Of a stretch of 64,000 nucleotides of DNA, positions 2,401-64,000 are shown one piece after another. A model generated the notes under the pieces. It was not told the origin of the DNA. It worked only from the letters and a program-made list of their open reading frames with translations, and made no database searches. The translations under genes were made by a program, and so were the position numbers. The first letter of the stretch is position 1. Every line of letters begins with the position of its first letter. This stretch comes from Schizochytrium sp. TIO01 (taxonomy: Eukaryota > Protista > Bigyra: Labyrinthulomycetes), in contig SMSO01000014.1 of assembly GCA_004764695.1 (NCBI GenBank), positions 4,474,845 through 4,538,844 of the forward strand, written 5' to 3'.

Positions 2401-4217
2401 CCTATCTAGCTAGGTACCTGCATCTACGCTTATGTGCCGCTCAGTTCTTTTCGATGATCAACTAAATGACATAGCACTAAATAGCAAAGCGGTGATCGAC
2501 CACTGTTTGCGATTACTACAAATAGATAAGAACAGTTTGACCCCATTGAGTTTTCCCAATTCCATTCTTCAGAAAGATCATTAAGTTATAAGGGAATATG
2601 GAGAAGAATGCATACAGATCGATTGATCCACCATTGGGTTATTATAAGTGTCGATGGCGCACGAGAACTCGGCCTCCATTTCCACACCCAGGCCTGCAGC
2701 ACACCGTCGACCCGGGCATGGTGGAGGTCCACGATGTGCGGTGCGAGGTCGAGCTGCAGAGCAGGTCAGCCATCGGTCGGTCGGTCAGTTCGACCACTTG
2801 AAGTTGGTTGGATGGATGGTTAGTTAGTTTGTTGGTTAGTTAAAGGTTTAATGAGTCAGGTTTTTTCCTTTTAAAATAAAAATGTATGATCATCATACTT
2901 CCCATAGCAATAGAGGACAGAGTGAAAGAAATCAGCGATTCCAAGTGTATTTATCGAGAAATATATATTGCTATGCTGTCGCAACGATGATTATTTGAGA
3001 CGATCTATGGAGATCTCTGGCTTCTCGATGTGGCATGCATTCATGTATATCAAGATTGGGCAGGACACAGACACTTGCTTTACATCGAGGATGAGATTGC
3101 ATTCGTTTGCACGTCTAGAGGACTACTAGTACCATTATAGGTGCTAAGTACGAAGTAAATACTAACGTGTATACGAATTCTTTTCTTGTTGTTCACCATT
3201 TCTGAAGGCTGCTCATTTTGCACCTCATTGAACAGTAGTAAAAGTAAGCGTGGGAAGGATTCTAGTTCATTAACACGCCAAGGACCTCGACACAGCTGGT
3301 CTCGTACATATTGTTCCATTCTAGACTTCGAGTTCGCTATACTGCCTTGATGATGGCGCAAATTTATTATTGTGCGAATAAAGTATCCATGACGATATGA
3401 TTTTTCGCGCTGAGAATTAAAAAAAAGAAAATGAAGAAAAGAATTAAATCGATATTGAAAAATAAACACACCTTCTTTGCACAACACTGCTAATAGACAA
3501 ACCCGCAACAAAGAGCCAACCCAGTCAGGGCCCGATTCCTGCGCTGCAAAGGACTTGATCAAGCCAACCGCCGTCTGGCCCATCGGCAGGGGCTTGTCAA
3601 CGGGCCTTTCTTAGTTTCTATCTCGTGAACACTCGGTTGCTGTTTCTGCATTCGTCGTTTTTGTTGTTGATACTGTTAACATTGATTGTGGTGGCGTTAG
3701 TTAGTTAATAGCTTTATTGAGTACTTGAGCTCGCCAGCACCTCGGCAGTATTGAAAGTTGCTGCGCTCTCGGGTTTACAGCGACTCTCTTCGGCAGGGCC
3801 TGCTATCGTTGCGGCCCTTCGTAAGGCATTTGAGTCTTCGAGAAGGAGACTCACTGTGGAATTTGCTTTAAAATATATACTATTGAAATATCAGGACGCT
3901 TGGTGACAGAACTATCTTGGGTGCCGACCTTCCTGGCTGTGCTAGGCAGGAGGTTGCGTCGATTGTGTTTCCCTGCTATCTATACCCTTGGTTCTCCCCC
4001 AAAGACACCGAATATAGTTAACTGGAAAGGCCTTTAGCGAAATTAAAGTCGTCTCTGGTCACAGCTCCAGAACGTGCTTGATAATTCACGGGTTGTTGAT
4101 TCTTGTGAAGATACCCTGAGAACATCTTGGTACAGAAGGTGGTGAAGAGGCTGAAGAGATCCTGTGCGGGCCCATCCGAGGGCCCTGCGTATCAGCACAT
4201 TGCCAGTGTAAGCAGCC

Positions 4218-28305: not shown

Positions 28306-30570
28306 CTATTCATGAGAAGATAGTAATGAAGCCTTAAATCCTTCCAAAGCACACTGGTCGTCGTCGTCGTCATCGTCGTCGTCATCATCATCATCGTCGT
28401 CATCGTCATCATCATTGTTTGGGGCTTGCTTCGCAGCCTTTTCCATTTCTTTCTCGTTCTCATCATCATCATCATCATCACCACCATCGTTCTTGTCAAT
28501 TTTGCCATTGCCATTTGCGGCCCGGATCAAATCCTCTGCTTCTCCACTTGCCATAAGGTTAGCAGCAGCTGTAGCAGCTGTAGGAATCGATGGCTGTGGT
28601 AAAACAGTTTCTTTATCAGTGGATCTAACTTGACGCTTCGCAGCTGGTGGCACCAATGTTGGCTCGCGTTGATCATAAGTATCACCTTCTTGCTCTACAT
28701 CATTCTCGGCATTCTCGATCGGATATCCCCACTCGTCTAACTCAGGAAGCTTTCGTTTGCTACCTGCTGTGCTAGAGGATGATCTTGAAGCTGGCGATGA
28801 TAGTGAGGTCGAGGAAGAGGAACAGGGTTGAGCGAAGCCTGCAGAGAGTTTCGCAGAGGGATCAATTGAGGTCGTGCTTTCCGCAGTGGTTGAGGAAAGT
28901 TGTTCTGCAGGCAAAGCCTCGGCTGGCGAAATGTTCGAAGTAATATCCTTGGGCATAAGTGACGCGACATCTGCTGCTCCAGGGACAACACCTGCTGCAG
29001 CATTAGATTCGGATACCTTTGATGATGAGGAGTATACGCGAAACAGTGAATAATGCGTAAATTGCTCGCGATTCCAGTTGTGAATACACGCATGCAACCA
29101 GTCGGGATGTACAACCCAGATTTTAGCAGCCTTTGCTTTTTGAGCGAGGGTCGAATTCGCATTCCAGGATATCACAGCACGGGTGTTTGCCTCAATAGAT
29201 GCCGAGCAGACAGCTCCGGCATTCTCCGCGAGTGCCCACATACTCCGACGATCTGGGTCTGGAAGGTCAATAACAATTGGCATACTGCGAAGGATGCGCC
29301 GCCGAAGCTCCCGAATAAGTTTCTTGACATCGCCCCCCTTGCCTTGCTTTTGCATGCTAGGTGTAATACCACCAGGGACCTTGTAAAAATGCGAATGAAC
29401 CCATTGCAAAAGCTCGAGGACGCGTTTCAGCCCACGGTCCATTTGCTGCTTGGCAAAAGCCTCATCCTCGTCCTTGACTTCCTCCTTAAGATCAAACTCT
29501 GGGCCTGACGTGTTGTTTACCTCTGACATGCCTAAAAAAAAGTGGTAGGGCCGGATAGTAATCAGGTTGTTGACATCTTCAATCCAGACATCAGAACGAT
29601 CGTCAACGGCGAGCACCATGCGGTCCTCCGTAGGGAAGAAACGTTGAAGGCGCTTAATCTTACCCAGCTCTGGCACATCGGTTCGCGAGATAATGCGATC
29701 TCCAAAAAGACTCTTGTCCGGATCAAAGATACGTGCGACAGCCTCCGCGTAAAGTCGTGTACCAGCTGTGTAAATGTATAATTCATACATCTTGCTCACC
29801 TGTTTGAGCCAATCCTCCAGGCCAGGCCGCAGCATAACAAAGTGCTCGCGAGCACCTCCAGGCACACCTTCCTTGCTCATGTCCAGCATAAATCGATGCA
29901 GGAGTTTATCAGGGAGACCTTTACTCTTGACAAATGCGGGCGCCCTTGCATCATCCGTGGCGTGGAGCATGGTATGGTCAATGTCCAGGACGAGCAGCAA
30001 TTTCTGAGAATTGATAAGTCGCTTCAGTGTACGCATATGGTCTCCCTCTGCCTCGTCTTGGCTTACCAAAATCTTGTTGCCGCCATCGACATTTAGGGTC
30101 ATAGATGCAGAGATTCCTTCTTCCGCACGTTGGTTCTCCACAAGTACACCTGAGGCTTCGCCAAGTGCGGTCTTGTTGATTAGAGAAGGAGTACGTCCAC
30201 ACAGGCCGCACAGACCGCCACCGATTACAATTGGGTGCTCACAGTATGACATCCGCAGAAGGGCAGGCATTTCCTGACGTACTGCTGACTCCCCATCCTG
30301 AATGGTCTCAGTTGGAGTCACGGGAGCTCCTGCAGGGAAGAAGATTTCCAGAATTGTGCCATCAAGAGGAGCTTGAAGGTCCACAATACGGTCGTTTGCA
30401 CCGTCTGGGCTCTTGCAGAGGCACTCAGCCATCACGTCACCGATCTCAACATCTTGACCAACCTCAACGCGCCACCTGCGTACACTTCCGCCCAGAGTAC
30501 CAGGAAATAGCACACGAGCACGATTTTCTGTAGACTCAGATTTTTCCTTCTTGGATCTACGACGACGCAT
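28306..30570 (-). CDS. FCP1: RNA polymerase II CTD phosphatase Fcp1/CTDP1, 754 aa
   Basis: N-terminal lipoyl/biotinyl-like hybrid; CEHPIVIGGLCGLCG; HAD motif LVLDIDHTMLHA (DxDxT); LRPGL..WL, YTAGTRLYA, FGDRIISR, AVDDRSDVW; BRCT-like VVHPDWLHAC; acidic tail. Confidence 0.93.
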   Translation of the reverse strand: MRRRRSKKEKSESTENRARVLFPGTLGGSVRRWRVEVGQDVEIGDVMAECLCKSPDGANDRIVDLQAPLDGTILEIFFPAGAPVTPTETIQDGESAVRQEMPALLRMSYCEHPIVIGGGLCGLCGRTPSLINKTALGEASGVLVENQRAEEGISASMTLNVDGGNKILVSQDEAEGDHMRTLKRLINSQKLLLVLDIDHTMLHATDDARAPAFVKSKGLPDKLLHRFMLDMSKEGVPGGAREHFVMLRPGLEDWLKQVSKMYELYIYTAGTRLYAEAVARIFDPDKSLFGDRIISRTDVPELGKIKRLQRFFPTEDRMVLAVDDRSDVWIEDVNNLITIRPYHFFLGMSEVNNTSGPEFDLKEEVKDEDEAFAKQQMDRGLKRVLELLQWVHSHFYKVPGGITPSMQKQGKGGDVKKLIRELRRRILRSMPIVIDLPDPDRRSMWALAENAGAVCSASIEANTRAVISWNANSTLAQKAKAAKIWVVHPDWLHACIHNWNREQFTHYSLFRVYSSSSKVSESNAAAGVVPGAADVASLMPKDITSNISPAEALPAEQLSSTTAESTTSIDPSAKLSAGFAQPCSSSSTSLSSPASRSSSSTAGSKRKLPELDEWGYPIENAENDVEQEGDTYDQREPTLVPPAAKRQVRSTDKETVLPQPSIPTAATAAANLMASGEAEDLIRAANGNGKIDKNDGGDDDDDDENEKEMEKAAKQAPNNDDDDDDDDDDDDDDDDDDDQCALEGFKASLLSSHE

Positions 30571-54723: not shown

Positions 54724-57566
54724 TTACAACGCTGGCACATTCCTCATTTCTGCTGGTAAAACCTGGTTTGCATTAAGGTCGGGCACATACATGATCCGGC
54801 CATTGATAAGTACCTTTCTACCCTTAGGTTTTCGTTGTCGAAGAAACACATACTTGCACGCAAAACTCATAATTATGACAAAAAGCGCCGCGAAAACTGG
54901 GGCTAGAAGCAAAAGAGCAAGACGAGGAATCGAACTATCATAACAAACGTCAGAGATATACGCTGGCAAAGATACGTAGTCGACCCTCAAGTAATCCGGT
55001 TGATCGCCGCATAGAGGGTTCCCAGAGAGATCCAGATACGTTAAACTCGAATATTCAACAAGATCCCATGGCCCAGTATTCAAATCATTTCCACGCAGGA
55101 TCCTGTATAACAGTAGTTTATGTTCACCACGCCAAAACAAATACCTGTCAGTAAACTTGGTGTGTGTATACCATGCTTGTTGTCTATATTTGAAGAGGCC
55201 AAACTTACAGCTCGCGCAAAGAAGGCAGATAAGTGTACTCAGTAAACGCAGAGGTCAGCTGGTTCGATGCAAGATCTAAGTAGGATAAATGGGATAAGTA
55301 TCTGATGCTGTTCGGAGTGCTGCGCAGAACATTGTTTCTGGCCTCACTACCAAGTTCGATTAATCGCATAGAAATGAGAATAGAAGAAGAAACGAGAGCC
55401 CCTCCTCACACGCACGCCCCCCAAAAGGGAAAAAAGACGGATCTATACGTCAGTGGCAAAGTTCATTTGTAAAAAATACATCACCTTACTGTTTCTCCTT
55501 TTTTTTTTAACCTGTACTATAAACCTTTATGAGGTTACCAAAGCTCCAAAAACGTACAGTATTTTGAGACTAGTCAGATAAGAGAGACTGGAAGGCAGAT
55601 CTGTCAAATTGTTGTAAGACAGTGATCTGTGCTGCAGCAAAGTCATATTGGGTTAGCTACCGATTAAACAGAGAAGCTCAACATCCAAATAACACAACAA
55701 AAGGCTAACCAACTTACAATTTAGTTAGTTGCGTCAGAGAAGTGAAATACTCTGGAACCTGATCAAAGTAACTGTCTGTAATAGAAAGTGATGTCAAATA
55801 CGAAAGTGAGCTAATTTGAGGGAAATATGAAAGCCCGTCGCATGTGAGTGCAGATGTATACTCTGATAAGTCATCAGAATAGCATGTGTAGTACCAATCA
55901 CACAAACATAATTCAGATAAACTGCAGTCTGGAATAGGATCTGGCATACCGTATACATTTGTAATGTGACCCAAATATGGTTGAGGACCACAAATTGGGT
56001 TTGATGTGACATATCTGCATAGTTGGGAATGTGTGAACAAGACTGTCAGTAAATACAAGTACCGGGTCGAGTGGTAATCTTTATAAGGAAACTTACAGTG
56101 TGGTCAAATCTGTCATACCTTCTATTGCATCAGGCAACGTCTGAATGTTATTCGACTCGAGATCGAGGTATGCTAACTTTGTTAGAGTACCGATTGATTC
56201 TGGCAAAGAAGTGATCTCATTGATCCAGAGAGAGCTGTTTTTATATCGAATGATGTGAGTGATATGTTCTATGTAAAACCCTGTGAAACCCTGTTGTCAT
56301 GAGAGAAGGTAAACAAACTTACAAGCTAGTCAACTTTGTGAGAGCGCTGATTTGTTGAGGAATGGTGGTTATTGCGTTGCTCTTTAAATTGATTGTTTGA
56401 AGATTAGTAAGACCAAAAAGTTCTTGTGGTATTGCAGTCATTCCACCACTCAGCAATTCTCTTTGCTTTTGAAATATGTTTGCTCTACTGTTAGTTAAAA
56501 TCTCAGAGAAAGATATTGTCGTACATGCATGCACAGTGCATGTAGCAAGTGTGTCTAGAAACTTACAAAGAGGTAAGAGACGTAAGCGAAGATAGAAATG
56601 ACGGGGCTGTTGAGTCACCAGTGCAGAGAAGGATCTGTGTTGTAGAGTATGATGTACTTGAGCATTCACCCCCATCACACATGCAGTTATGCGCAGTTGT
56701 CGGAGACAGAGTTGGGCTTTGCGTCGGGACTTGAGACGATGAGTCACATGCTGGCACAGGGTTTGGCATACCGTATACATTTGAGATGTGGCCCAAATAT
56801 GGTTGAGGACCACATATTGGGTTTGACGTGACATATCTGCATATTTGTTTATGTGTGAACGAGACTGTCAGTAAGTACAAGCACCGAGTCGAGTGACAGT
56901 CCATATTAGGAAAGGAAACTTACAATGTGGACAAATCTGTCATATATTCTATTGCATCAGGCAACGTCTGAATGTTATTTGACTCGAGATCGAGGTAACC
57001 TAACTTTGTTAGAGCACTCATTGATTCTGGCAAAGAAGTGATCTCATTGATCCACAAGGTACTGTTTTTATACCAAATGATGTGAGCGATATGTTCTATG
57101 TAAGATCTTGTTATAATGGGAGAAAGTAAACAAACTTACAGACCAGTTAACATCGTGAGAGAACTAATTTCCTCTGGAACTGTTATTATCGCATTGCTTT
57201 TAAAGCTGATCTGGCGGAGATTAGTAAGCTCAAAAACAGTCTGTGGCACTGACGTCAAGCCGCCACTTAACAATGCTCTGTTTAATTTCAAAACAACTGA
57301 CACTGTTAATTTGAATGCTATCAAGGCTTTCTTTGTAAAGAACACTTGTAAATGTCGAATTCGCAAACTTACAGAGAAGTAAGAGATGTAAGAGCCGAGA
57401 GAAACGTCGGGGCACTCGATTCATATATACAGCTGAGACTTTCGGTTGTACTAGGGTACGATGCACTCGAGCAGGTACTGCTATCGCATGTGCAACTCGC
57501 GAATAGTTGTAACGGAAGATAGCCCGCAACGAAAGCCCACACAAGAACAACACCTACGAAAGTCAT
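54724..57566 (-). CDS. LRR type I membrane receptor-like gene A, 632 aa, 10 exons: 57566-57373, 57277-57140, 57061-56924, 56836-56567, 56460-56323, 56234-56097, 56014-55718, 55626-55558, 55346-55209, 55102-54724
   Basis: Signal peptide MTFVGVVLVWAFVAG; Cys caps CTCD...C and NPICG...C; 23-aa LxxLxLxxNxLxxLP repeats; PTQSPT stalk; TM LALLLLAPVFAALFVIIMSFAC followed by RQRK. Nine GT-AG phase-2 introns; exon lengths sum to 1899 nt with an open frame. Confidence 0.88.
55925..56715. repeat. Copy 1 of a ~790-bp near-identical tract shared by LRR genes A and B (copy 2 at 61237-62027)
   Basis: Constant 5312-bp offset at all exon boundaries (56014/61326, 56097/61409, 56323/61635, 56567/61879); introns are also nearly identical. 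Confidence 0.95.
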
Positions 57567-57788
57567 GGTATTTGTTTGCTTGTCACTTTGTTGCTATTTT
57601 GATTGCAAACTCGAGCGTAACATGGGGAGCATACCAATATGTTACCGAGGTTGATGAAACTGTACACTTATAGCACATTATAGTGCTGTACGGTTTATTC
57701 ACCGAGGTTCGCAGAGGTGAGCTTGGAGCCTTACTGTTTTATCTATATCACTCCAAAGATTTGGGAGCAGTAAGGGTTGTTAAGGGTA

Positions 57789-57960
57789 CTGTAGGCTCGC
57801 TTCAACGGACACTACGTATTTATAAGATTTGCAAAACTTGCATTTCCTATGGTGACATGGGGCTGTGGCCCAATTTAGGGTCAAAGTTTTAACCCGCGAC
57901 TCAAAGGGAAATTTTTTTAACATGTTCTTGGATAGGTTGTGCAAAAGGATGCCTGCGGCG
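57789..57960 (-). ncRNA. Putative Fanzor omegaRNA scaffold / transposon right end
   Basis: Lies at and just 3' of the nuclease C-terminus. Minus strand shows GC stem TTGGGCCACAGCCCC, near-palindrome TGCAAGTTTTGCA and terminal TGTCCGTTGAAGCGAGCCTACAG. TnpB/Fanzor omegaRNAs are encoded at the right end. Confidence 0.45.
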
Positions 57961-59570
57961 GCGTGGATTTCACGATCGGCTACGCGTTTGCATTTGGGGC
58001 ATTTTAAAATCTTGAATTTTCCGAGCCTTTCATGGACGGTACCAACAACATTCATTGCATAGTCTTGAATTGCACTCCTCTCGGCCAATAATAGGTTTGC
58101 ACCAGAAGAAAAGCTCTGTTTTGTGAATGAGCCGTTGTGGGAAGCTGAAGTGGCGAGCTGCCTTGCTATGGATCCGTCTTGTTAGCTGGTCACTATCTTG
58201 GCTGTTTCAAGTTTAGACAAGAGGATAAAACGATAGATATCACAGAGCCAAAGCACGAGCTCGTAATGAATCTCGGTAATTCTGCCCTAAGTAGTGCGTG
58301 GAGGTATGCGCGTCTTGAGGTAGTTTTGCCATTTTCCTTTTGGTCAGTTTAATTGATGCGGCGACAGAGAAAAATGTTTTTATTTATTTTTTACTTCCTC
58401 TGTGTCCCACTCAATGGCTCAGTTATCAGCGTTGTACATGGCCTGAAATGAGCGTACTCCTGGGTTCAAAGCAATGATAGCATGGTGAGCACTAGTGTCT
58501 GATTTTCTGGATATACTTTTCTTCATGTAAAAAGCAGAAATAAATATGACTTAGGCGATTCGTTTGCACACGCACGGCATTTGTTACTTGGTTGGGGAAC
58601 TTTTTCTTGTGAGTACAACGCGTTTGAGAAAGAGAAAGAATGTGGCTTTGCCTTTCCTTCGCTTCCCCTTCCGTGACCTGACTCTTGAAATATAGGTTTT
58701 ATTATGTTGTGTACGAAGCTTGGAAGAAGAGCGAATGCTAAGTTTCTCTGGGGCTGCTGATTCCTCATTTTTGGCCTGACCAGCATCGAAAGCGCCAAAA
58801 AAGAAACGATTCGTGAATCTCTTATAGCTTGTGGTATTTTAAGAACCCGCACAGATGCCTTCGTGCTTTCTTTAAGGCGTGCTACAATCTCCAATCGAAG
58901 GAACTAGTAGACAAGACATTGCTAGAGTCCTTGGCGTCCCTTTTTATAGACGTCATGGACATAGGGGTTTTAATACAGCAGGACTAGACAATCAGACTTT
59001 CGTGGATGAGAAGCCAAGAACCAAAGTGTGTCTACAAATCTGTAGAATCCAGTATGGTGCAACTTGAATTAATGGTTGAAGAGGTTGAATTAACCTAACC
59101 TCGTCAAGTAATATCGAACCATAGCTCAAGAATATCATAGTCTCACACATACTACATAATCAGTCTGCCCTGGATGTCATTTCCAAGACAGCAGCTCGCT
59201 AACTCTTGAAATCAACCTTCTTGAAGCCTTCATCACATCGAGACTCTTGCCTTCATCTTTGCAGTCAACCTTCAGCTGATCAGGTTTATCTTTCAGCAAG
59301 GCGACTACTGTTTTTTCTCCAGAGCTAACACAAAAATCTTAGGATTGTCAATTTTGTCTTTCAAGATTTGCTTTGTTTTGGAACTCTTCTTGATGCATTC
59401 CTTTTTATGCAGGGAGAACGGCTTCTTTTTAACCTCTGAACAAATAATAATGAAAGGCAACACCAAAGTTGTAAGCTCCTCTGGTATCGCCGAACCATTT
59501 TTTGACTTGAGTAAGCTGATCGTACAGAAATCTTCCTAGCAAGAACTAAAGTGTACTCGTTTTTGGTTGT
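57918..59570 (-). pseudogene. tnpB: Fanzor2 (IS607 TnpB-derived RNA-guided RuvC nuclease) pseudogene
   Basis: ARKI/LY...VKKWFGDTRGAYN (59540-59465, N-terminal WED/HTH); KIPQAIRDS (~58840); RuvC-I IIALNPGVRSFQAMY (~58475-58432); EIHYELVLWLCDIYRFILLSKLETAK (RuvC-II); RRIHSKAARHFSFPQRLIHK; EECNSRLCNEC...LGKFKILKCPKC (Zn ribbon); DREIHAAAGILL (RuvC-III). Multiple stops and frameshifts. Confidence 0.88.
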
Positions 59571-59589
59571 CTTCCGTGCCTTCACGCAC

Positions 59590-60200
59590 GATCTATTGTT
59601 CCTTGCTACGTCGTCACCGTCTATTTCGCAATACTTGTTATCCGTGATGCAATGACATAAAGACAGTGATGATGCCAAGGAGCTCTTTTATGGAGGTGAC
59701 GGAGTCCCCGGAATGCATATTTTCGCCGTGTACCTAGAGCTTGACATTTTTTTTTTTTAAAGGTGCCCAAGAAGGTCGATGCTTTGCTCGCGCATTCGGT
59801 TACGGTACGTGGCCACAACTTAACCGACTCTGCCGCAGTAACACATAGCCAGAAGGGCCCAGAAGCCCGCCGTTTTGAAGATAACCCCATTACCAATGTT
59901 TTAATAAATGGTTGCGACGTCTGGATAGACACGTTGAGTATTATCACCAACGCGTTCGAAATCCTCCTTTTGCTTAGTGGAAGGTTTTCTGGCGTAGATA
60001 ATGGTATGGTCGGTGCTGTCGTTGCTCACAGCCGCCGGGACCGTAGCCATGGATACGCTTAACATTGCAACTTGCGTATTTGTGCTTAAACCGGCTGCGC
60101 ATGTGACCTCCATCAGTCCAAGCCCGAAGGGATCTTGTTGGGACGCCAAACTTTTGTTTGAAGTGTTTTGCTGGATTATAGTAAAGGTTTGCTTCACTTG
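59590..60200 (-). pseudogene. tnpA: IS607-family TnpA serine recombinase pseudogene
   Basis: MerR-like HTH PAKHFKQKFGVPTRSLRAWTDGGHMR; IIYARKPSTKQKEDFER (cf. IYARVSS.KQK.DLER); YPD...*NIGNGVIFKTAGFWALL (cf. DIGSG.NFKR.G...LL); VVATYRNRM (cf. VV.YRDRL); ELLGIITVFMSLHHG (cf. DLLSIITVF..R.HG). Confidence 0.85.
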
Positions 60201-61034
60201 TAGTGTTTACAGCTTCTTGGTTCCTTGGCCATGCCATTCTCTTATCAAAGCTCACCACAGCTCCACTTCTCATCAAAGGCCTAAAAATTCATACTTGATC
60301 CATTACCTAATATTTGGAGGTTATACATGTTCCAACGTTTTCATAGGTACAATAAGCGGAAAAAAGAATTTGACGTGTGTATGCAGAAATATTTTGGTCT
60401 TCCGCATTAGTGCAAAACCCCAGAGCTGTATTTTCCAATTATTTACCAAACTTCAACTAAGTTAAGGAGGAGGTTCGATGAAACTTAGTTTTCTATACCT
60501 ACCTACTTACATAACGTATTATAATTATATATAAGGAGCAAGACTCGCTTGGAATGCAGATAATAGACGACAAATGGTGAAAACAGATAACTAGATGTTC
60601 GGAAATCCCAGCTTTAAACAAAGTCTTCTTGTATTCTCTTCTACATACATTTGATGTCAGGGCAGCGCTACAACTTTGTACATAAAACATATCTAGTTTG
60701 ATATATTTAACTCACCGCCAATCTTATTATCATGACTGGCTATATCTTTGTGAGGATGCACATTCTAACAAACATAAATGAAGAATATATAATAAGTCAT
60801 TAAACACGACGCGACTAGAAGTATCTAATGCCTTTCAATAACTTTAATTGGATCATAACTGTAAGCTATTCCGGCTATCTACATTCTTTAATGCCTCAAA
60901 CTTCTCTATAATATGCATGGATCTTTTAGAGAGTAGCAACAATGAACTTAAGTATTGTGTTGGACATCTATATGGTAAGGTGCTTTAAGATATAAAGAAG
61001 ATTAAGTCAACATTCTACGAAATGTGCAACTTCA

Positions 61035-64000
61035 CTACCATGCTGGTTGAGTTTCCAATTCCAAAGGTGCAATTTGATTAGACCTCGTCTTGCCATTATT
61101 TACTGTCAGAACAGAAGTGCCTCTTTGGGTCCGTCGTCGTCGAAGTACATACTTGCACACACAAGACATTGTGATGACAAATACGATTGCAATAGTTGGG
61201 GCTAAAATCAAAATAACGAGGCTTGGCCAAGAACGACAGTCTGGAATAGGATCTGGCATACCGTATACATTTGTAATGTGACCTAAATATGGTTGAGGAC
61301 CACAAATTGGGTTTGATGTGACATATCTGCATAGTTGTGAGTGTGTGAGCAAGACTGTCAGTGAATACAAGTACCGGGTCGAGTGACAATCCTTATAAGG
61401 AAACTTACAATGTGGTCAAATCTGTCATACCTTCTATTGCATCAGGCAACGTCTGAATGTTATTCGACTCGAGATCGAGGTATGCTAACTTTGTTAGAGT
61501 ACCGATTGATTCTGGCAAAGAAGTGATCTCATTGATCCCAAAGGTACTGATTTTATACCGAATGATGTGAGTGATATGTTCTATGTAAAACCCTGTGAAA
61601 CCCTGTTGTCATGAGAGAAGGTAAACAAACTTACAAGCTAGTCAACTTTGTGAGAGCGCTGATTTGTTGAGGAATGGTGGTTATTGCGTTGCTCTTTAAA
61701 TTGATTGTTTGAAGATTAGTAAGACCAAAAAGTTCTTGTGGTAATGCAGTCATTCCACCACTCAGCAATTCTCTTTGCTTTTGAAATATGTTTGCTCTAC
61801 TGTTAGTTAAAATCTCAGAGAAAGACATTGTCGTACATGCATGCACAGTGCATATAGCGAGTGTGTCTAGAAACTTACAAAGAGGTAAGAGACATAAGCG
61901 AAGATAGAAATGACGGGGCTGTTGAGTCACCAGTGCAGAGAAGGATCTGTGTTGTAGAGTATGATGTACTTGAGCATTCACCCCCATCACACATGCAGTT
62001 ATGCGCAGTTGCTGGAGACAGAGTTGGAGACAGCGTTGGAGACAGAATTGGAGACAGAGTTGGAGACAGAGTTGGAGACAGAGTTGGAGACAGTGTTGGA
62101 GACAGTGTTGGAGACAGAGTTGGAGACAGAGTTGGGACTTGAGTAGGATTACAAGTTGGTATAGGTTCAGGCATCCCATACACTTCTGTAATATGAGACA
62201 CATTTGGTTGGGCCCCACAAAGTGGGTTAGAAAATACAAATCTAAGTTACATAAAAGTTCCGTGAGGCCGTCAGTTAATGAACATTTGTGATGAGATGAC
62301 GATGCACACAAGCAAACTTACAAGACGTTTAGGTTCGTCAAAACCTCTAATGCTGAAGGTAGAGTTTCAATGTTGTTTGACTCAAGGTCGAGAGACACTA
62401 AGTTTGTCAAAGCGCTCATCGATTCTGGCAAAGACGTGATCTCATTCATCCAAAAAACACTAGATATGTATCACAACATGTTAGCGTATTTCCCTTCAAA
62501 ATGCAAAGCATTCATATGCAAAAACTTACAGGTTAGTCAACAACGTGAGAGCACCAATCTCCTCAGGGATTGTAGTGAGTGCGTTTGATTTCAAATTAAG
62601 TACACGAAGACTGGTAAGCTCAAAAATATCCGGTGATATCGCTGTCATCCCACCACTTAGCAGAGACCTATGTTGTTATTGTCAAAATCCACAACGCCAT
62701 CAATAAATACACACGAAGAACAATTAGTCTCTTGGTCAAAGGGCAACTAATAGCTGCAAACTTACAGAGCGGTTAGAGACGCAAGAGATGAGAGGAAGAG
62801 TGGACCATTTGGCTCATTAGTACAGTAAAGATTTTCTGTTGTAGCATACGTGACATTGGAACAAGCCATACCATCGCACATGCAGTTATGTGCTGTTGTT
62901 GGAGTCTGTGTTGGGCTTTGTGTCGGGACTTGAGTCAAATTACATGTTGACAGTGGGTTCGGCATACCGTATACATATGGGATATGACTCACAGATGGTT
63001 GTGGACCGCAAATTGGGTTTGAGGTGACATCTCTAAATTTAAAAAGGAGCAAAAGCGCGAAGCTATTAGTTTTTACACGCGTGATCACAATCAACAAGTT
63101 CGAAATTTAAACTTACAGTACCTCTAAGTGCGTCATAGCCTCTATCGCTGTAGGCAAGGTTCGAATACTGTTTGACTCAAGGTCAAGAGTGACTAGATTT
63201 GTCAAAGCACTCATTGATTCTGGCAACGCGGTAATCTCGTTTATCCAGAAAGTACTATGTATATACGATAAACGTGAGTGATAATTTACTGTCTAGCACA
63301 ATTGTTCTAATAGAAGGAAACTTACAGGCTGGTCAGCAGCGTGAGGGCACTGATTTCTTCAGGGACTGTGGTGATTTCGTTTGATTTGAGATTCATTCTT
63401 TCAAGGTTTGTAAGTTGAAACAAATCTAATGGTATTGCAGTCATCCCACCACTTAAAAGAGACCTAAGAAATCCAAATTTGCAACTTGCCGTCAGTTCGT
63501 CAACATTCAAATGCGAAGATTCATGCATTGTTGTTATATTTGTGAACTCACAATTCGGTGAGAGAGGATAGAGATAAGAGAAACGACGGAGCATTTGAAT
63601 CACCAGTGCACGTGAGGACTTGTGTTGTGGCGTATGTTGCGCTTGAGCAAGCAGCACCATCGCACGTACAGTTATGAGCTGTTGTCGGAGCCTGAGTCGG
63701 TGCTTGTGTTTGTGTTGGTGTTTGATTCGGAGCCTGAGTCGGTGTTTGTGTTGGCGTTTGTGTTGGCGTTTGTGTTGGGACCTGAGTTGAAGCACATGAT
63801 GGTATAGGGCTTGGCACACCGTATACATTAATGATATGACTCAGATCTGGCTGCGGACCACAGAGTGGATTCGAGGTGACATACCTAAATAATGAAACAT
63901 CTCGAGATTGTTAGTGAATACGAGCTTAAGTTAATATCACGATCCATGTGTGATACCACAACTTACAATGTCTCTAAGTTTGTCATAGCCTCAATCGCTG
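61035..64000 (-). CDS. LRR type I membrane receptor-like gene B, 5' end beyond the window, >700 aa. Exons: >64000-63967, 63884-63552, 63463-63326, 63254-63117, 63032-62766, 62667-62530, 62459-62322, 62241-61879, 61772-61635, 61546-61409, 61326-61035
   Basis: Three complete plus one partial repeat of [cap/stalk/cap exon][138-nt SGG exon][138-nt WIN exon]. Ten phase-2 GT-AG introns with an open frame; TM LVILILAPTIAIVFVITMSCVC followed by RRRR. Confidence 0.88.
62013..62135 (-). repeat. Coding 12-bp VNTR (SPTL)n in a mucin-like stalk of LRR gene B
   Basis: About 10 units of tggagacagagt and variants. Confidence 0.9.
63686..63780 (-). repeat. Coding (PTQT/PTQA)n stalk repeat in LRR gene B
   Basis: Imperfect 12-bp units such as tgttggcgtttg. 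Confidence 0.85.

What the first reader, a model, noticed from the sequence alone, without database searches (positions are those of the whole stretch)
54724..64000. Cassette-built, multi-headed LRR surface receptors: a candidate exon-shuffling recognition system
Seen: two tandem genes are assembled from a repeated three-exon unit, [C-cap NPxCG..C + Pro/Thr stalk + N-cap CxCD..C..C][138 nt = 2 LRRs][138 nt = 2 LRRs]. All 19 introns are phase 2 and cut the same Leu/Phe codon of the LxxLxL strand. Every internal exon length is a multiple of 3 (69, 138, 267, 270, 297, 333, 363), so any exon or whole cassette can be skipped, duplicated or swapped in frame. Most other genes in the window are intronless. 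The product is a string of self-capped ~5-LRR heads on mucin-like spacers, then a TM and a short tail with no signalling domain. Established: each head resembles the LRRNT-LRR-LRRCT-stalk layout of lamprey VLRs, and LRR exon shuffling is known in brown-algal ROCO genes. Inference: a modular, evolvable receptor or adhesin family (pathogen, prey or self recognition) in a protist. Retention of a GTAAG/GTGAG intron gives an immediate in-frame stop, i.e. a TM-less form or an NMD substrate.
Basis: partly seen in the sequence, partly recalled or inferred. Interest (0 to 1): 0.82.

Follow-up and report, generated by a model that had tools for sequence, protein, structure and literature searches.

The report
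Multi-headed LRR surface protein gene pair
Two neighbouring protist genes each encode a membrane protein carrying several small, self-capped leucine-rich-repeat "heads" strung on mucin-like spacers. The layout is real and unusual, but it arose by ordinary tandem duplication and gene conversion at one locus, not as a large exon-shuffling recognition repertoire.

Summary
On the minus strand, gene A (57566-54724, 10 exons, 632 codons) and gene B (start beyond the window at about 66944, end 61035, 22 exons, 1382 codons) are intact. Both are built from the triplet [C-cap + Pro/Thr stalk + Cys N-cap][138 nt][138 nt]. All 30 introns (19 in the window) are GT-AG, phase 2, and split the same LRR Leu/Phe codon.

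- **Family size:** the cap exon and this two-LRR exon type occur nowhere else in the 64-Mb genome, so there is no donor-cassette reservoir.
- **Selection:** the heads are old (synonymous sites saturated) and under purifying selection (omega about 0.1-0.3).
- **Exchange tracts:** three recent tracts of 0.3-1.0 kb start or end inside exons as often as in introns. This fits unequal crossing-over and gene conversion, not intron-mediated exon shuffling.
- **Caps:** they match no Pfam LRRNT/LRRCT model and no PDB sequence, so the likeness to VLRs is analogy only.

Single-headed relatives (SP, N-cap, LRRs, C-cap, stalk, TM) lie nearby and on contig C5. They suggest the cap exon is a fusion of an ancestral last and first exon.

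Splicing and expression could not be tested. This scan noted the same stretch in overlapping windows, and 84-nt phase-2 LRR exon arrays elsewhere in this genome.

The parts
57373..57566 (-). Gene A exon 1: start codon, signal-peptide-like segment, Cys N-cap (CxCx4Cx13C), first LRR flank; ends in phase 2
57140..57277 (-). Gene A exon X1, 138 nt, 2 LRRs
56924..57061 (-). Gene A exon Y1, 138 nt, 2 LRRs; 89-92% identical to Y2/B-Y7 (conversion tract)
56567..56836 (-). Gene A cap exon K1, 270 nt: C-cap + P/T stalk + N-cap
56323..56460 (-). Gene A exon X2, 138 nt by homology (AAG acceptor; 162/165-nt alternatives in frame); Pfam LRR_4/LRR_8
56097..56234 (-). Gene A exon Y2, 138 nt; Pfam LRR_4/LRR_8
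55718..56014 (-). Gene A exon K2, 297 nt: C-cap joined without stalk to a divergent N-cap and first LRR of a third head
55558..55626 (-). Gene A exon 8, 69 nt, one LRR, GTACGT donor, phase 2
55209..55346 (-). Gene A exon 9, 138 nt, 2 LRRs, phase 2
54724..55102 (-). Gene A last exon: LRR + C-cap (GNPLCGDQP...C) + TM + 43-residue tail + TAA
61035..61326 (-). Gene B last exon: C-cap + TM + short tail + stop
61409..61546 (-). Gene B exon Y7, 138 nt
61635..61772 (-). Gene B exon X7, 138 nt by homology (AAG acceptor, same ambiguity as A-X2); 99% identical to A-X2
61879..62241 (-). Gene B cap exon K6, 363 nt, with a 12-nt-period (TLSP)n stalk
62322..62459 (-). Gene B exon Y6, 138 nt
62530..62667 (-). 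Gene B exon X6, 138 nt
62766..63032 (-). Gene B cap exon K5, 267 nt
63117..63254 (-). Gene B exon Y5, 138 nt
63326..63463 (-). Gene B exon X5, 138 nt
63552..63884 (-). Gene B cap exon K4, 333 nt, PTQT-rich stalk
63967..64000 (-). Gene B exon Y4, 3' part (the exon runs to window-equivalent 64104). The 11 exons 5' of it run on to the start codon at about 66944 (L009 3789), outside the window
55925..56715 (-). Gene A copy of the 792-nt tract that is 97.1% identical to gene B 61237-62027. It runs from the end of the stalk inside exon K1 to the last Cys of the C-cap inside exon K2, i.e. one structural head including its introns
61237..62027 (-). Gene B copy of the same 792-nt tract (inside K6 to 89 nt into the last exon)

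Best explanation
These are two intact, tandem, spliced genes of a small lineage-specific family of type-I membrane proteins.

Architecture (shown from sequence):
- Each product has a signal peptide, then 3 (gene A) or 7 (gene B) small LRR domains.
- Each domain has a four-Cys N-cap, four 23-residue LRRs and a fifth strand inside a two-Cys C-cap with the motif N-P-[LI]-C-G-x-Q-P...C.
- Pro/Thr-rich, probably O-glycosylated spacers separate all of gene B's heads and gene A's first two. Gene A's third head follows its second without a stalk.
- A transmembrane helix and a tail of about 40 residues with no recognisable domain follow.

Origin (inferred):
- A single-headed ancestor (SP+N-cap exon, LRR exons, last exon with C-cap+stalk+TM) underwent an internal duplication.
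- That duplication joined the 5' part of the last exon to the 3' part of the first exon. This created the composite cap exon and a 3-exon unit of about 0.8 kb.
- The unit then multiplied by unequal crossing-over.
- The phase-2 introns at one LRR codon are inherited copies of an arrangement that is general for LRR genes in this genome.
- Gene conversion and unequal exchange still move tracts of 0.3-1 kb between heads and between the two genes, without regard to exon borders.

Function (inferred):
- A multivalent surface binder (adhesin or co-receptor) that holds several similar binding sites away from the membrane.
- The heads differ mainly at predicted concave-face positions, so they may bind related but not identical ligands.
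For: Gene reality:
- The frame stays intact over 10 and 22 exons using only canonical GT-AG junctions.
- LRR exons show pS 0.63-0.66 against pN 0.16-0.19, omega about 0.1-0.3. Between old head pairs the BLAST matches barely extend beyond the exons.
- The X and Y exons are Pfam LRR_4/LRR_8.
- SP-like and TM hydropathy peaks are present.

Locus restriction:
- The cap profile hits only this locus plus one C-cap hit 28 kb away.
- The nine Y-type exons score above 96 bits; the next hit scores 41 bits.
- The C-cap DNA motif occurs 16 times in the genome. Eleven are in genes A, B and gene 4 and one is in a gene on C5, against a control count of 4.

Single-headed relatives:
- They have phase-2 LTxLxxL|GTAAGT donors, and gene 4 and the C5 gene also carry the same C-cap followed by a stalk and TM. 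They are gene 3, gene 4 and the C5 gene.
- The C-cap alignment shows N, C, G, Q and P invariant.
- The N-cap half of the cap profile matches both first exons.

Recent exchange:
- A 792-nt tract at 97.1% identity between A and B is bounded inside exons.
- A tract of about 330 nt at about 90% runs from mid-intron to the C-cap end.
- A tract of about 400 nt at 100% in gene B spans a whole cap exon plus flanking intron parts, inside a 1049-nt, 89% staggered duplicate.

Head differences: concave x-positions differ about twice as much as other positions (0.475 against 0.233, permutation p = 0.0004), yet 5 of the 20 are invariant.
Against: - No transcript evidence could be obtained.
- The acceptor of exon X in cassette A2/B7 is ambiguous.
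- No structure was predicted for a head, because joined exons were not to be submitted.
- Disulfide caps, glycosylation, topology and ligand are inferred from sequence patterns only.
- The fusion origin of the cap exon is inferred from architecture, not reconstructed.
- Higher variability at x-positions is expected for any LRR fold and does not show different specificities.
Confidence: 0.72

Rival explanations
1. This is an evolvable recognition repertoire in which exons or whole cassettes are shuffled between genes by recombination in introns, or skipped by alternative splicing, to create many receptor variants.
For: - All internal exons are symmetric phase 2-2 and multiples of 3.
- X and Y exon trees are incongruent.
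- Recent transfer of one head between the two genes.
- Variability is enriched at concave-face positions.
- Precedents exist in Tetrahymena (PMC6564038) and in brown-algal ROCO genes with alternative splicing (PMC11378527).
Against: - Only two genes and ten heads (nine of the X/Y cassette type) exist, with no donor cassettes elsewhere.
- Omega is about 0.1-0.3 and synonymous sites are saturated, so most heads are old and conserved.
- Exchange-tract borders fall inside exons as well as introns.
- The tree incongruence is explained by the staggered register of a tandem duplication.
- There is no isoform evidence of any kind.
Confidence: 0.1
2. A ligand-sensing receptor-like protein. The short tail and TM recruit a separate signalling partner, as plant LRR receptor-like proteins do with co-receptor kinases, so the genes act in sensing and not in adhesion.
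For: - LRR ectodomain, single TM, and a short tail without a domain.
- The two juxtamembrane segments share a CKYV-x-LR-x-R pattern.
- The plant-like 'GNPLCG...C' C-cap resemblance comes from my own knowledge and was not tested.
Against: - No partner has been identified.
- Seven near-equivalent heads on mucin spacers suit avidity binding better than one-ligand sensing.
- The LRRs are the 23-residue LxxLxLxxNxIxxLP kind, not the plant-specific 24-residue kind.
- Pfam LRRNT_2 is not matched.
Confidence: 0.15
3. Decaying or never-expressed duplicates: tandem repeat DNA that only looks like genes.
For: - No transcript evidence was found.
- A transposon-like fossil noted by another reader lies between the genes.
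- One weak AAG acceptor.
Against: - Thirty of 30 junctions keep the frame, with no stop in 632 or 1382 codons.
- Strong purifying selection acts on the exons, and between old head pairs the BLAST matches barely extend beyond the exons.
Confidence: 0.03

Closest known systems
[quoted passage not shown]
   Same: Tandem arrays of LRR exons of one exact length, nearly all flanked by phase-2 introns, explained by clonal exon duplication and unequal crossing-over.
   Different: - There: tens of thousands of exons in thousands of dispersed, young, species-specific genes, with one exon type and a retrotransposon association.
- Here: 18 exons of 138 nt (two LRRs each) in two genes at one locus, in a three-exon unit that also carries caps and a stalk. 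The heads are old and conserved.
Brown-algal ROCO LRR exon arrays (PMC11378527; Zambounis et al. 2012 as cited there)
   Same: 23-residue LxxLxxLxLxxNxL repeats in phase-2 exons within a stramenopile. Exon duplication or shuffling is proposed as a source of binding diversity.
   Different: - ROCO proteins are cytoplasmic LRR-ROC-COR GTPases with one LRR per 72-bp exon and documented splice variants.
- Here the products are secreted-pathway type-I membrane proteins with Cys caps. They have no ROC-COR domain, two LRRs per exon, and no isoform data.
84-nt one-LRR-per-exon arrays of the same genome (385-bp repeats near rDNA)
   Same: Same genome, same phase-2 position just before the LRR beta-strand. 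I confirmed 13 consecutive 84-nt phase-2 exons in a 385-bp tandem array.
   Different: Those are 28-residue RI-like repeats in highly similar tandem units. Other agents report about a thousand such exons, which I did not test. They show no caps, stalk or TM. The cassettes studied here are a separate, tiny family.
Lamprey VLR and platelet GPIb-alpha (LRR head on a Thr/Pro-rich stalk with a membrane anchor). Comparison from my own knowledge.
   Same: Each head is a small capped LRR domain followed by a mucin-like stalk, and the protein is membrane-anchored.
   Different: - The caps match no LRRNT or LRRCT model.
- The germline genes are complete, and there is no cassette reservoir for somatic assembly.
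- Several heads sit on one chain.
Slit and multiple-cysteine-cluster Toll receptors (several capped LRR domains in one chain). Comparison from my own knowledge.
   Same: More than one N-capped and C-capped LRR block in a single extracellular polypeptide.
   Different: Those use canonical LRRNT/LRRCT caps, longer LRR blocks and short linkers. Here up to 7 blocks of about 5 LRRs are separated by Pro/Thr spacers of roughly 10-50 residues.

Membership tests
Pfam LRR (LRR_8 / LRR_4, clan LRR) | Match to the LRR profile above the gathering score | tested here: met
   X and Y exons each score 31-35 bits against a cut-off of 27 for LRR_4 and LRR_8.
VLR-type receptor | Canonical LRRNT and LRRCT caps | tested here: not met
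   No Pfam family at E<=0.01 for the cap exons, and none of LRRNT, LRRCT or LRRNT_2 even at E<=10. No PDB sequence match at E<=10.
VLR-type receptor | Incomplete germline gene plus a flanking library of donor LRR cassettes | tested here: not met
   Both genes are complete in the genome. No further cassettes are found anywhere in the 64 Mb.
VLR-type receptor | Thr/Pro-rich stalk and membrane anchorage | tested here: met
   P/T-rich stretches lie in every cap exon of gene B and in K1 of gene A, and TM segments lie in the last exons. The resemblance is in layout only.
Phase-2 LRR exon-array genes (Tetrahymena / brown-algal type) | Fixed-length LRR exons flanked on both sides by phase-2 introns | tested here: met
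   Eighteen exons of exactly 138 nt, and all 30 introns are phase 2.
Phase-2 LRR exon-array genes (Tetrahymena / brown-algal type) | Large, dispersed, rapidly turning-over family | tested here: not met
   Confined to one locus. Synonymous sites between most heads are saturated and omega is 0.1-0.3.
Phase-2 LRR exon-array genes (Tetrahymena / brown-algal type) | Alternative splicing of LRR exons | not testable with these tools
ROCO | ROC-COR GTPase module after the LRRs | tested here: not met
   No such domain is found in any exon scanned, and the proteins end in a TM and a short tail.
Plant-type LRR receptor-like protein | LRRNT_2 N-cap and 24-residue LxxLxLxxNxLSGxIP repeats | tested here: not met
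   No LRRNT_2 match. The repeats are 23 residues with an NxIxxLP pattern.
Plant-type LRR receptor-like protein | Single TM and a short cytoplasmic tail without a kinase | tested here: met

The most novel reading that the evidence does not exclude
Regulated skipping of cassettes turns two genes into a set of surface isoforms with different head number and length, which would be a DSCAM-like scheme in a protist. This includes skipping a cap exon alone: because every junction sits at the same LRR codon, that would fuse two 5-LRR heads into one continuous longer solenoid. Head number might also differ between strains through unequal crossing-over.
Probability: 0.08. Interest if true: 0.8.

Novelty: new variant of a known kind. 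Interest (0 to 1): 0.38.

Why it matters
- It adds a clean, small example of how a capped extracellular LRR domain can be multiplied as a unit. The composite cap exon records an old join between a last exon and a first exon.
- It shows that uniform intron phase and symmetric exons, often read as signs of a shuffling system, also follow from plain tandem duplication.
- The cap sequences have no recognisable relatives, so the heads may be an independent solution to capping an LRR solenoid.
- If the proteins are on the surface, they are candidates for attachment or recognition in thraustochytrids, whose surface biology is little known.
- It is not evidence for a diversifying immune-like repertoire.

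Tried and rejected
- **Cap-exon profile against 1.84 billion representative proteins.** One hit at E = 9.8e-4, a bacterial-looking FN3 + LRR protein matched over LRR-like sequence. It is not a relative.
- **Word-indexed search with the cap alignment.** Nothing found, and Pro/Thr words may have swamped the candidate list.
- **Word search with gene A's last exon.** Only P0004, a TTG-started genomic ORF call from the same locus, so no information on splicing.
- **Exact look-up of five window ORFs.** None was in the collection. This is uninformative because the called starts may differ.
- **ESM Atlas with a cap exon.** Scores were at most 0.85 and pointed only to generic LRR clusters.
- **Metagenome scan with the Y-exon profile.** Six loci at 41-51% identity, none with the C-cap motif, so these are generic LRR hits.
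- **Pfam on four minus-strand open frames between the genes.** Nothing found. I neither confirm nor reject the Fanzor/IS607 reading of another note.
- **Species identity.** Other notes say Aurantiochytrium. However, contig C13 is 7.46 Mb, and that paper reports chromosomes of 1.0-4 Mb. I leave the species open.
- Exons were searched one by one by reference, and joining was done only inside a script to count stops.
Full report
**What is there**

The window is C13:4474845-4538844 of a 64.07-Mb, 37-contig eukaryotic assembly. Translating the minus strand of 54.6-64 kb shows a repeating set of open segments:
- a Cys-rich segment ending in ...LTSLTSL;
- a segment reading ...LLSGGMTAIP...NLKSNAITTIP...LTxLTSL;
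- a segment reading ...WINEITSLPES...LDLESNNIQTLP...MTxLxTL;
- a segment reading YVTSNPICGPQP...GMPxPxPxC, then a Pro/Thr run, then NCMCDGxxC...C...LTSLTSL.

Each segment ends at xT|GT[AG]AGT. Choosing the AG acceptor that keeps the frame and matches the paralogues gives exons of exactly 138 nt for the two LRR segments, which I call X and Y. It gives 255-363 nt for the composite cap exon, which I call K.

I fetched the 10 kb beyond the window (L009). Gene B starts with a signal-peptide-like exon at window-equivalent 66944 and has 22 exons encoding 7 heads. Gene A (57566-54724) has 10 exons:
- two standard heads;
- a K exon whose C-cap runs straight into a divergent N-cap;
- a 69-nt exon and a 138-nt LRR exon;
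- a last exon with an LRR, a C-cap, a TM segment and the tail.

With these junctions the two genes read 632 and 1382 codons without an internal stop. I used the joined sequences only inside that script to count stops.

**Check of the observation**

All 30 introns (19 in the window) are GT-AG and phase 2. They split the codon of the fourth position of the LxxLxLxxN motif, a Leu or Phe. For the 26 cassette introns tabulated, lengths are 69-106 nt with no preference for multiples of three, and each places a stop at the first intronic codon.

That last point follows automatically from phase 2 plus GTAAG/GTGAG. The remaining four introns, at gene A's 3' end and before gene B's last exon, were placed.

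GTAAGT is about eight times denser in the two genes than in the other 54 kb, where it sits at background level. This fits the remark that the rest of the window is intron-poor.

Pfam calls the X and Y exons LRR_4/LRR_8. The first exons have hydrophobic N-termini, and the last exons have a 19-residue TM segment followed by Arg/Lys.

There are two caveats. The acceptor of X in cassette A2/B7 is a weak AAG, with in-frame CAG and TAG alternatives 27 and 24 nt upstream. The uniform phase also reflects copying, not 19 independent events.

**Are these real genes?**

Between heads, the X and Y exons have median synonymous differences of 0.63-0.66 per site (saturated) but non-synonymous differences of 0.16-0.19, giving omega of about 0.1-0.3. 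For old head pairs, BLAST matches barely extend beyond the exons. Together with 30 frame-preserving junctions, this makes pseudogenes or chance very unlikely.

I could not obtain direct transcript evidence.

**How big is the family?**

- A profile of seven K exons (A1) finds 12 places in the genome. All are in genes A and B except one C-cap match 28 kb away.
- A profile of the nine Y exons (A2) finds those nine at 97-108 bits, and then nothing above 41 bits.
- The DNA pattern for N-x-[LI]-C-G-x-Q-P occurs 16 times. Ten are in genes A and B, one is in gene 4 and one is in a gene on C5. The reversed-pattern control gave 4.

So there is no reservoir of spare cassettes and no dispersed repertoire.

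Outside the genome I found nothing convincing:
- The K profile met one borderline, unrelated bacterial-type protein among 1.84 billion representatives.
- The word search gave nothing.
- The metagenome scan returned only generic LRR loci lacking the C-cap motif.
- The cap exons match no Pfam family and no PDB sequence.
- The ESM Atlas gave only weak LRR-context neighbours.

This absence has limited weight. The profile is short, and protists of this group are poorly represented in the collections.

**Relatives that explain the origin**

Three further genes share the phase-2 LTxLxxL|GTAAGT junctions and the type-I layout, but each has a single head:
- gene 3, directly upstream of gene B;
- gene 4, on the plus strand at C13:4565002-4567064;
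- a gene on C5.

In gene 4 and the C5 gene, the last exon reads C-cap (GN[SP]LCGxQPxLS...C), then a long Ser/Thr/Pro stalk, then TM and tail. N, C, G, Q and P of the cap are invariant across all five aligned sequences.

The N-cap half of the K profile matches the first exons of A and B. The simplest account of the K exon is therefore an old internal duplication that joined the front of a last exon (C-cap + stalk) to the back of a first exon (N-cap). That would create a unit of about 0.8 kb, [K][X][Y], able to multiply by unequal crossing-over. This step is inferred, not shown.

**Shuffling or conversion?**

There are three recent tracts.

1. Gene A 56715-55925 and gene B 62027-61237 are 97.1% identical over 792 nt, introns included. 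The tract begins at the end of the stalk inside a K exon. It ends at the last Cys of the C-cap, inside the next K exon in A and inside the last exon in B. It is one structural head, not a set of exons.
2. The 3' half of head A1 is about 90% identical to A2/B7, from the middle of the X|Y intron to the C-cap end. Its X exon is only 67% identical.
3. In gene B, a 1049-nt stretch is duplicated in a staggered register (Y1..K2 against Y2..K3) at 89% identity. It contains about 400 nt of perfect identity, covering a whole K exon and parts of both flanking introns.

The ML trees reflect this. X exons unite B2+B3 (95/94), while Y exons reject that pair (p-AU 0.010). Y exons unite A1+A2+B7 (100/100), a grouping the X exons neither recover nor reject (p-AU 0.31). 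I named these clades after seeing the identity matrices, so the p-values are indicative only.

But the borders of the tracts show homologous exchange along a tandem array, not recombination aimed at introns.

**Do the heads differ where ligands would bind?**

Over eight heads, the predicted concave positions (x2, x3, x5, x7 and x8 of each repeat) differ in 47.5% of pairwise comparisons, against 23.3% for the other positions (permutation p = 0.0004). Five of the 20 concave positions are invariant, including the D-E-S face of the fourth repeat.

This is the usual pattern for LRR folds and sits within overall purifying selection. It allows related but non-identical specificities, and it is no evidence of diversifying selection.

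**Mechanism proposed**

The product is a multivalent surface binder. All of gene B's heads, and gene A's first two, are separated by Pro/Thr spacers that are probably glycosylated; gene A's third head follows its second directly. In both proteins the last head sits directly at the membrane, since neither last exon has a stalk.

The tail has no domain, so any signalling would need a partner. An adhesin role and a co-receptor role cannot be separated with the present data.

**Context**

Phase-2 LRR exon arrays are known from several systems:
- Tetrahymena (PMC6564038);
- brown-algal ROCO genes, with the gonadotropin-receptor precedent cited in the same paper (PMC11378527);
- elsewhere on this same chromosome, where a 385-bp tandem repeat holds 13 consecutive 84-nt phase-2 exons of RI-like LRRs, as other notes of this scan reported.

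What is new here is the combination: a composite cap exon, self-capped heads of about 5 LRRs repeated up to seven times on mucin-like spacers, and caps without recognisable relatives.

Other notes call the organism Aurantiochytrium. Contig C13 (7.46 Mb), however, exceeds the 1-4 Mb chromosomes reported there, so I leave the species open.

**Verdict**

The anatomy is real and well described. It is an interesting architecture but an ordinary evolutionary mechanism. The claim of a recognition system is unsupported.

Noticed in passing
L009:4741-6092 (minus strand; window-equivalent 67896-69247): A third LRR-TM gene directly upstream of gene B. It has a single head with a CxCx5Cx13C N-cap, LRR exons with the same phase-2 LTxLxxL|GTAAGT donors, a different C-cap (DISGNVDLC...C), and a TM segment.
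   Followed up: partly
L011:7003-9065 (plus strand; C13:4565002-4567064): A single-headed LRR gene whose last exon carries the same C-cap type (GNSLCGSQPDLS...C), then a Ser/Thr/Pro stalk, a TM segment, a Cys-rich juxtamembrane stretch and a longer tail. It looks like the ancestral layout.
   Followed up: partly
L012:4365-6502 (minus strand; C5:658864-661001): Another single-headed member on a different contig. It has a signal peptide, a Cys-rich N-cap, LRR exons, and then a last exon with GNPLCGEQPNLS...C, a Pro/Thr/Ala stalk of about 90 residues, a TM segment and a short basic tail.
   Followed up: partly
L013:1473-6478 (C13:5668972-5673977): A 385-bp tandem repeat (12.9 copies, 90% matches) contains 13 consecutive exons of exactly 84 nt. 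All are phase 2, and each encodes one RI-like LRR (LxxNxIGxEGAKAxAAALKENxSLTSL). This confirms the other notes that such 'spacer' repeats are LRR exon arrays.
   Followed up: partly
window:62013-62148: The stalk of cap exon K6 is a near-perfect 12-nt coding microsatellite, (TLSP) repeated about 11 times. Stalk length differs widely between heads, with cap exons of 255 to 363 nt, so it may be length-polymorphic between strains.
   Followed up: no
L009: about 2785-3155 against about 2015-2385 (window-equivalent 66310-65940 against 65540-65170): About 400 nt are 100% identical between two adjacent cassettes of gene B. The stretch covers a whole cap exon and parts of both flanking introns, and it is flanked by sequence that is 82-98% identical. 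This is either a very recent conversion or possibly an assembly effect.
   Followed up: partly
My Pfam scan of four minus-strand open frames there found nothing. I did not examine the plus strand.
   Followed up: partly
window:4218-8765 and 28306-30570: Long intron-free ORFs: a 1515-residue uDENN-DENN-dDENN protein with a weak PPR match, and a 754-residue FCP1-like NIF phosphatase with a BRCT domain. These are ordinary eukaryotic housekeeping genes.
   Followed up: no
G000 contig C13 as a whole: C13 is 7.46 Mb, longer than the 1.0-4 Mb chromosomes reported for Aurantiochytrium limacinum MYA-1381 in the preprint 10.1101/2023.06.15.545109. The species assignment in other notes may therefore need checking; this could be a different assembly, strain or species.
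   Followed up: no
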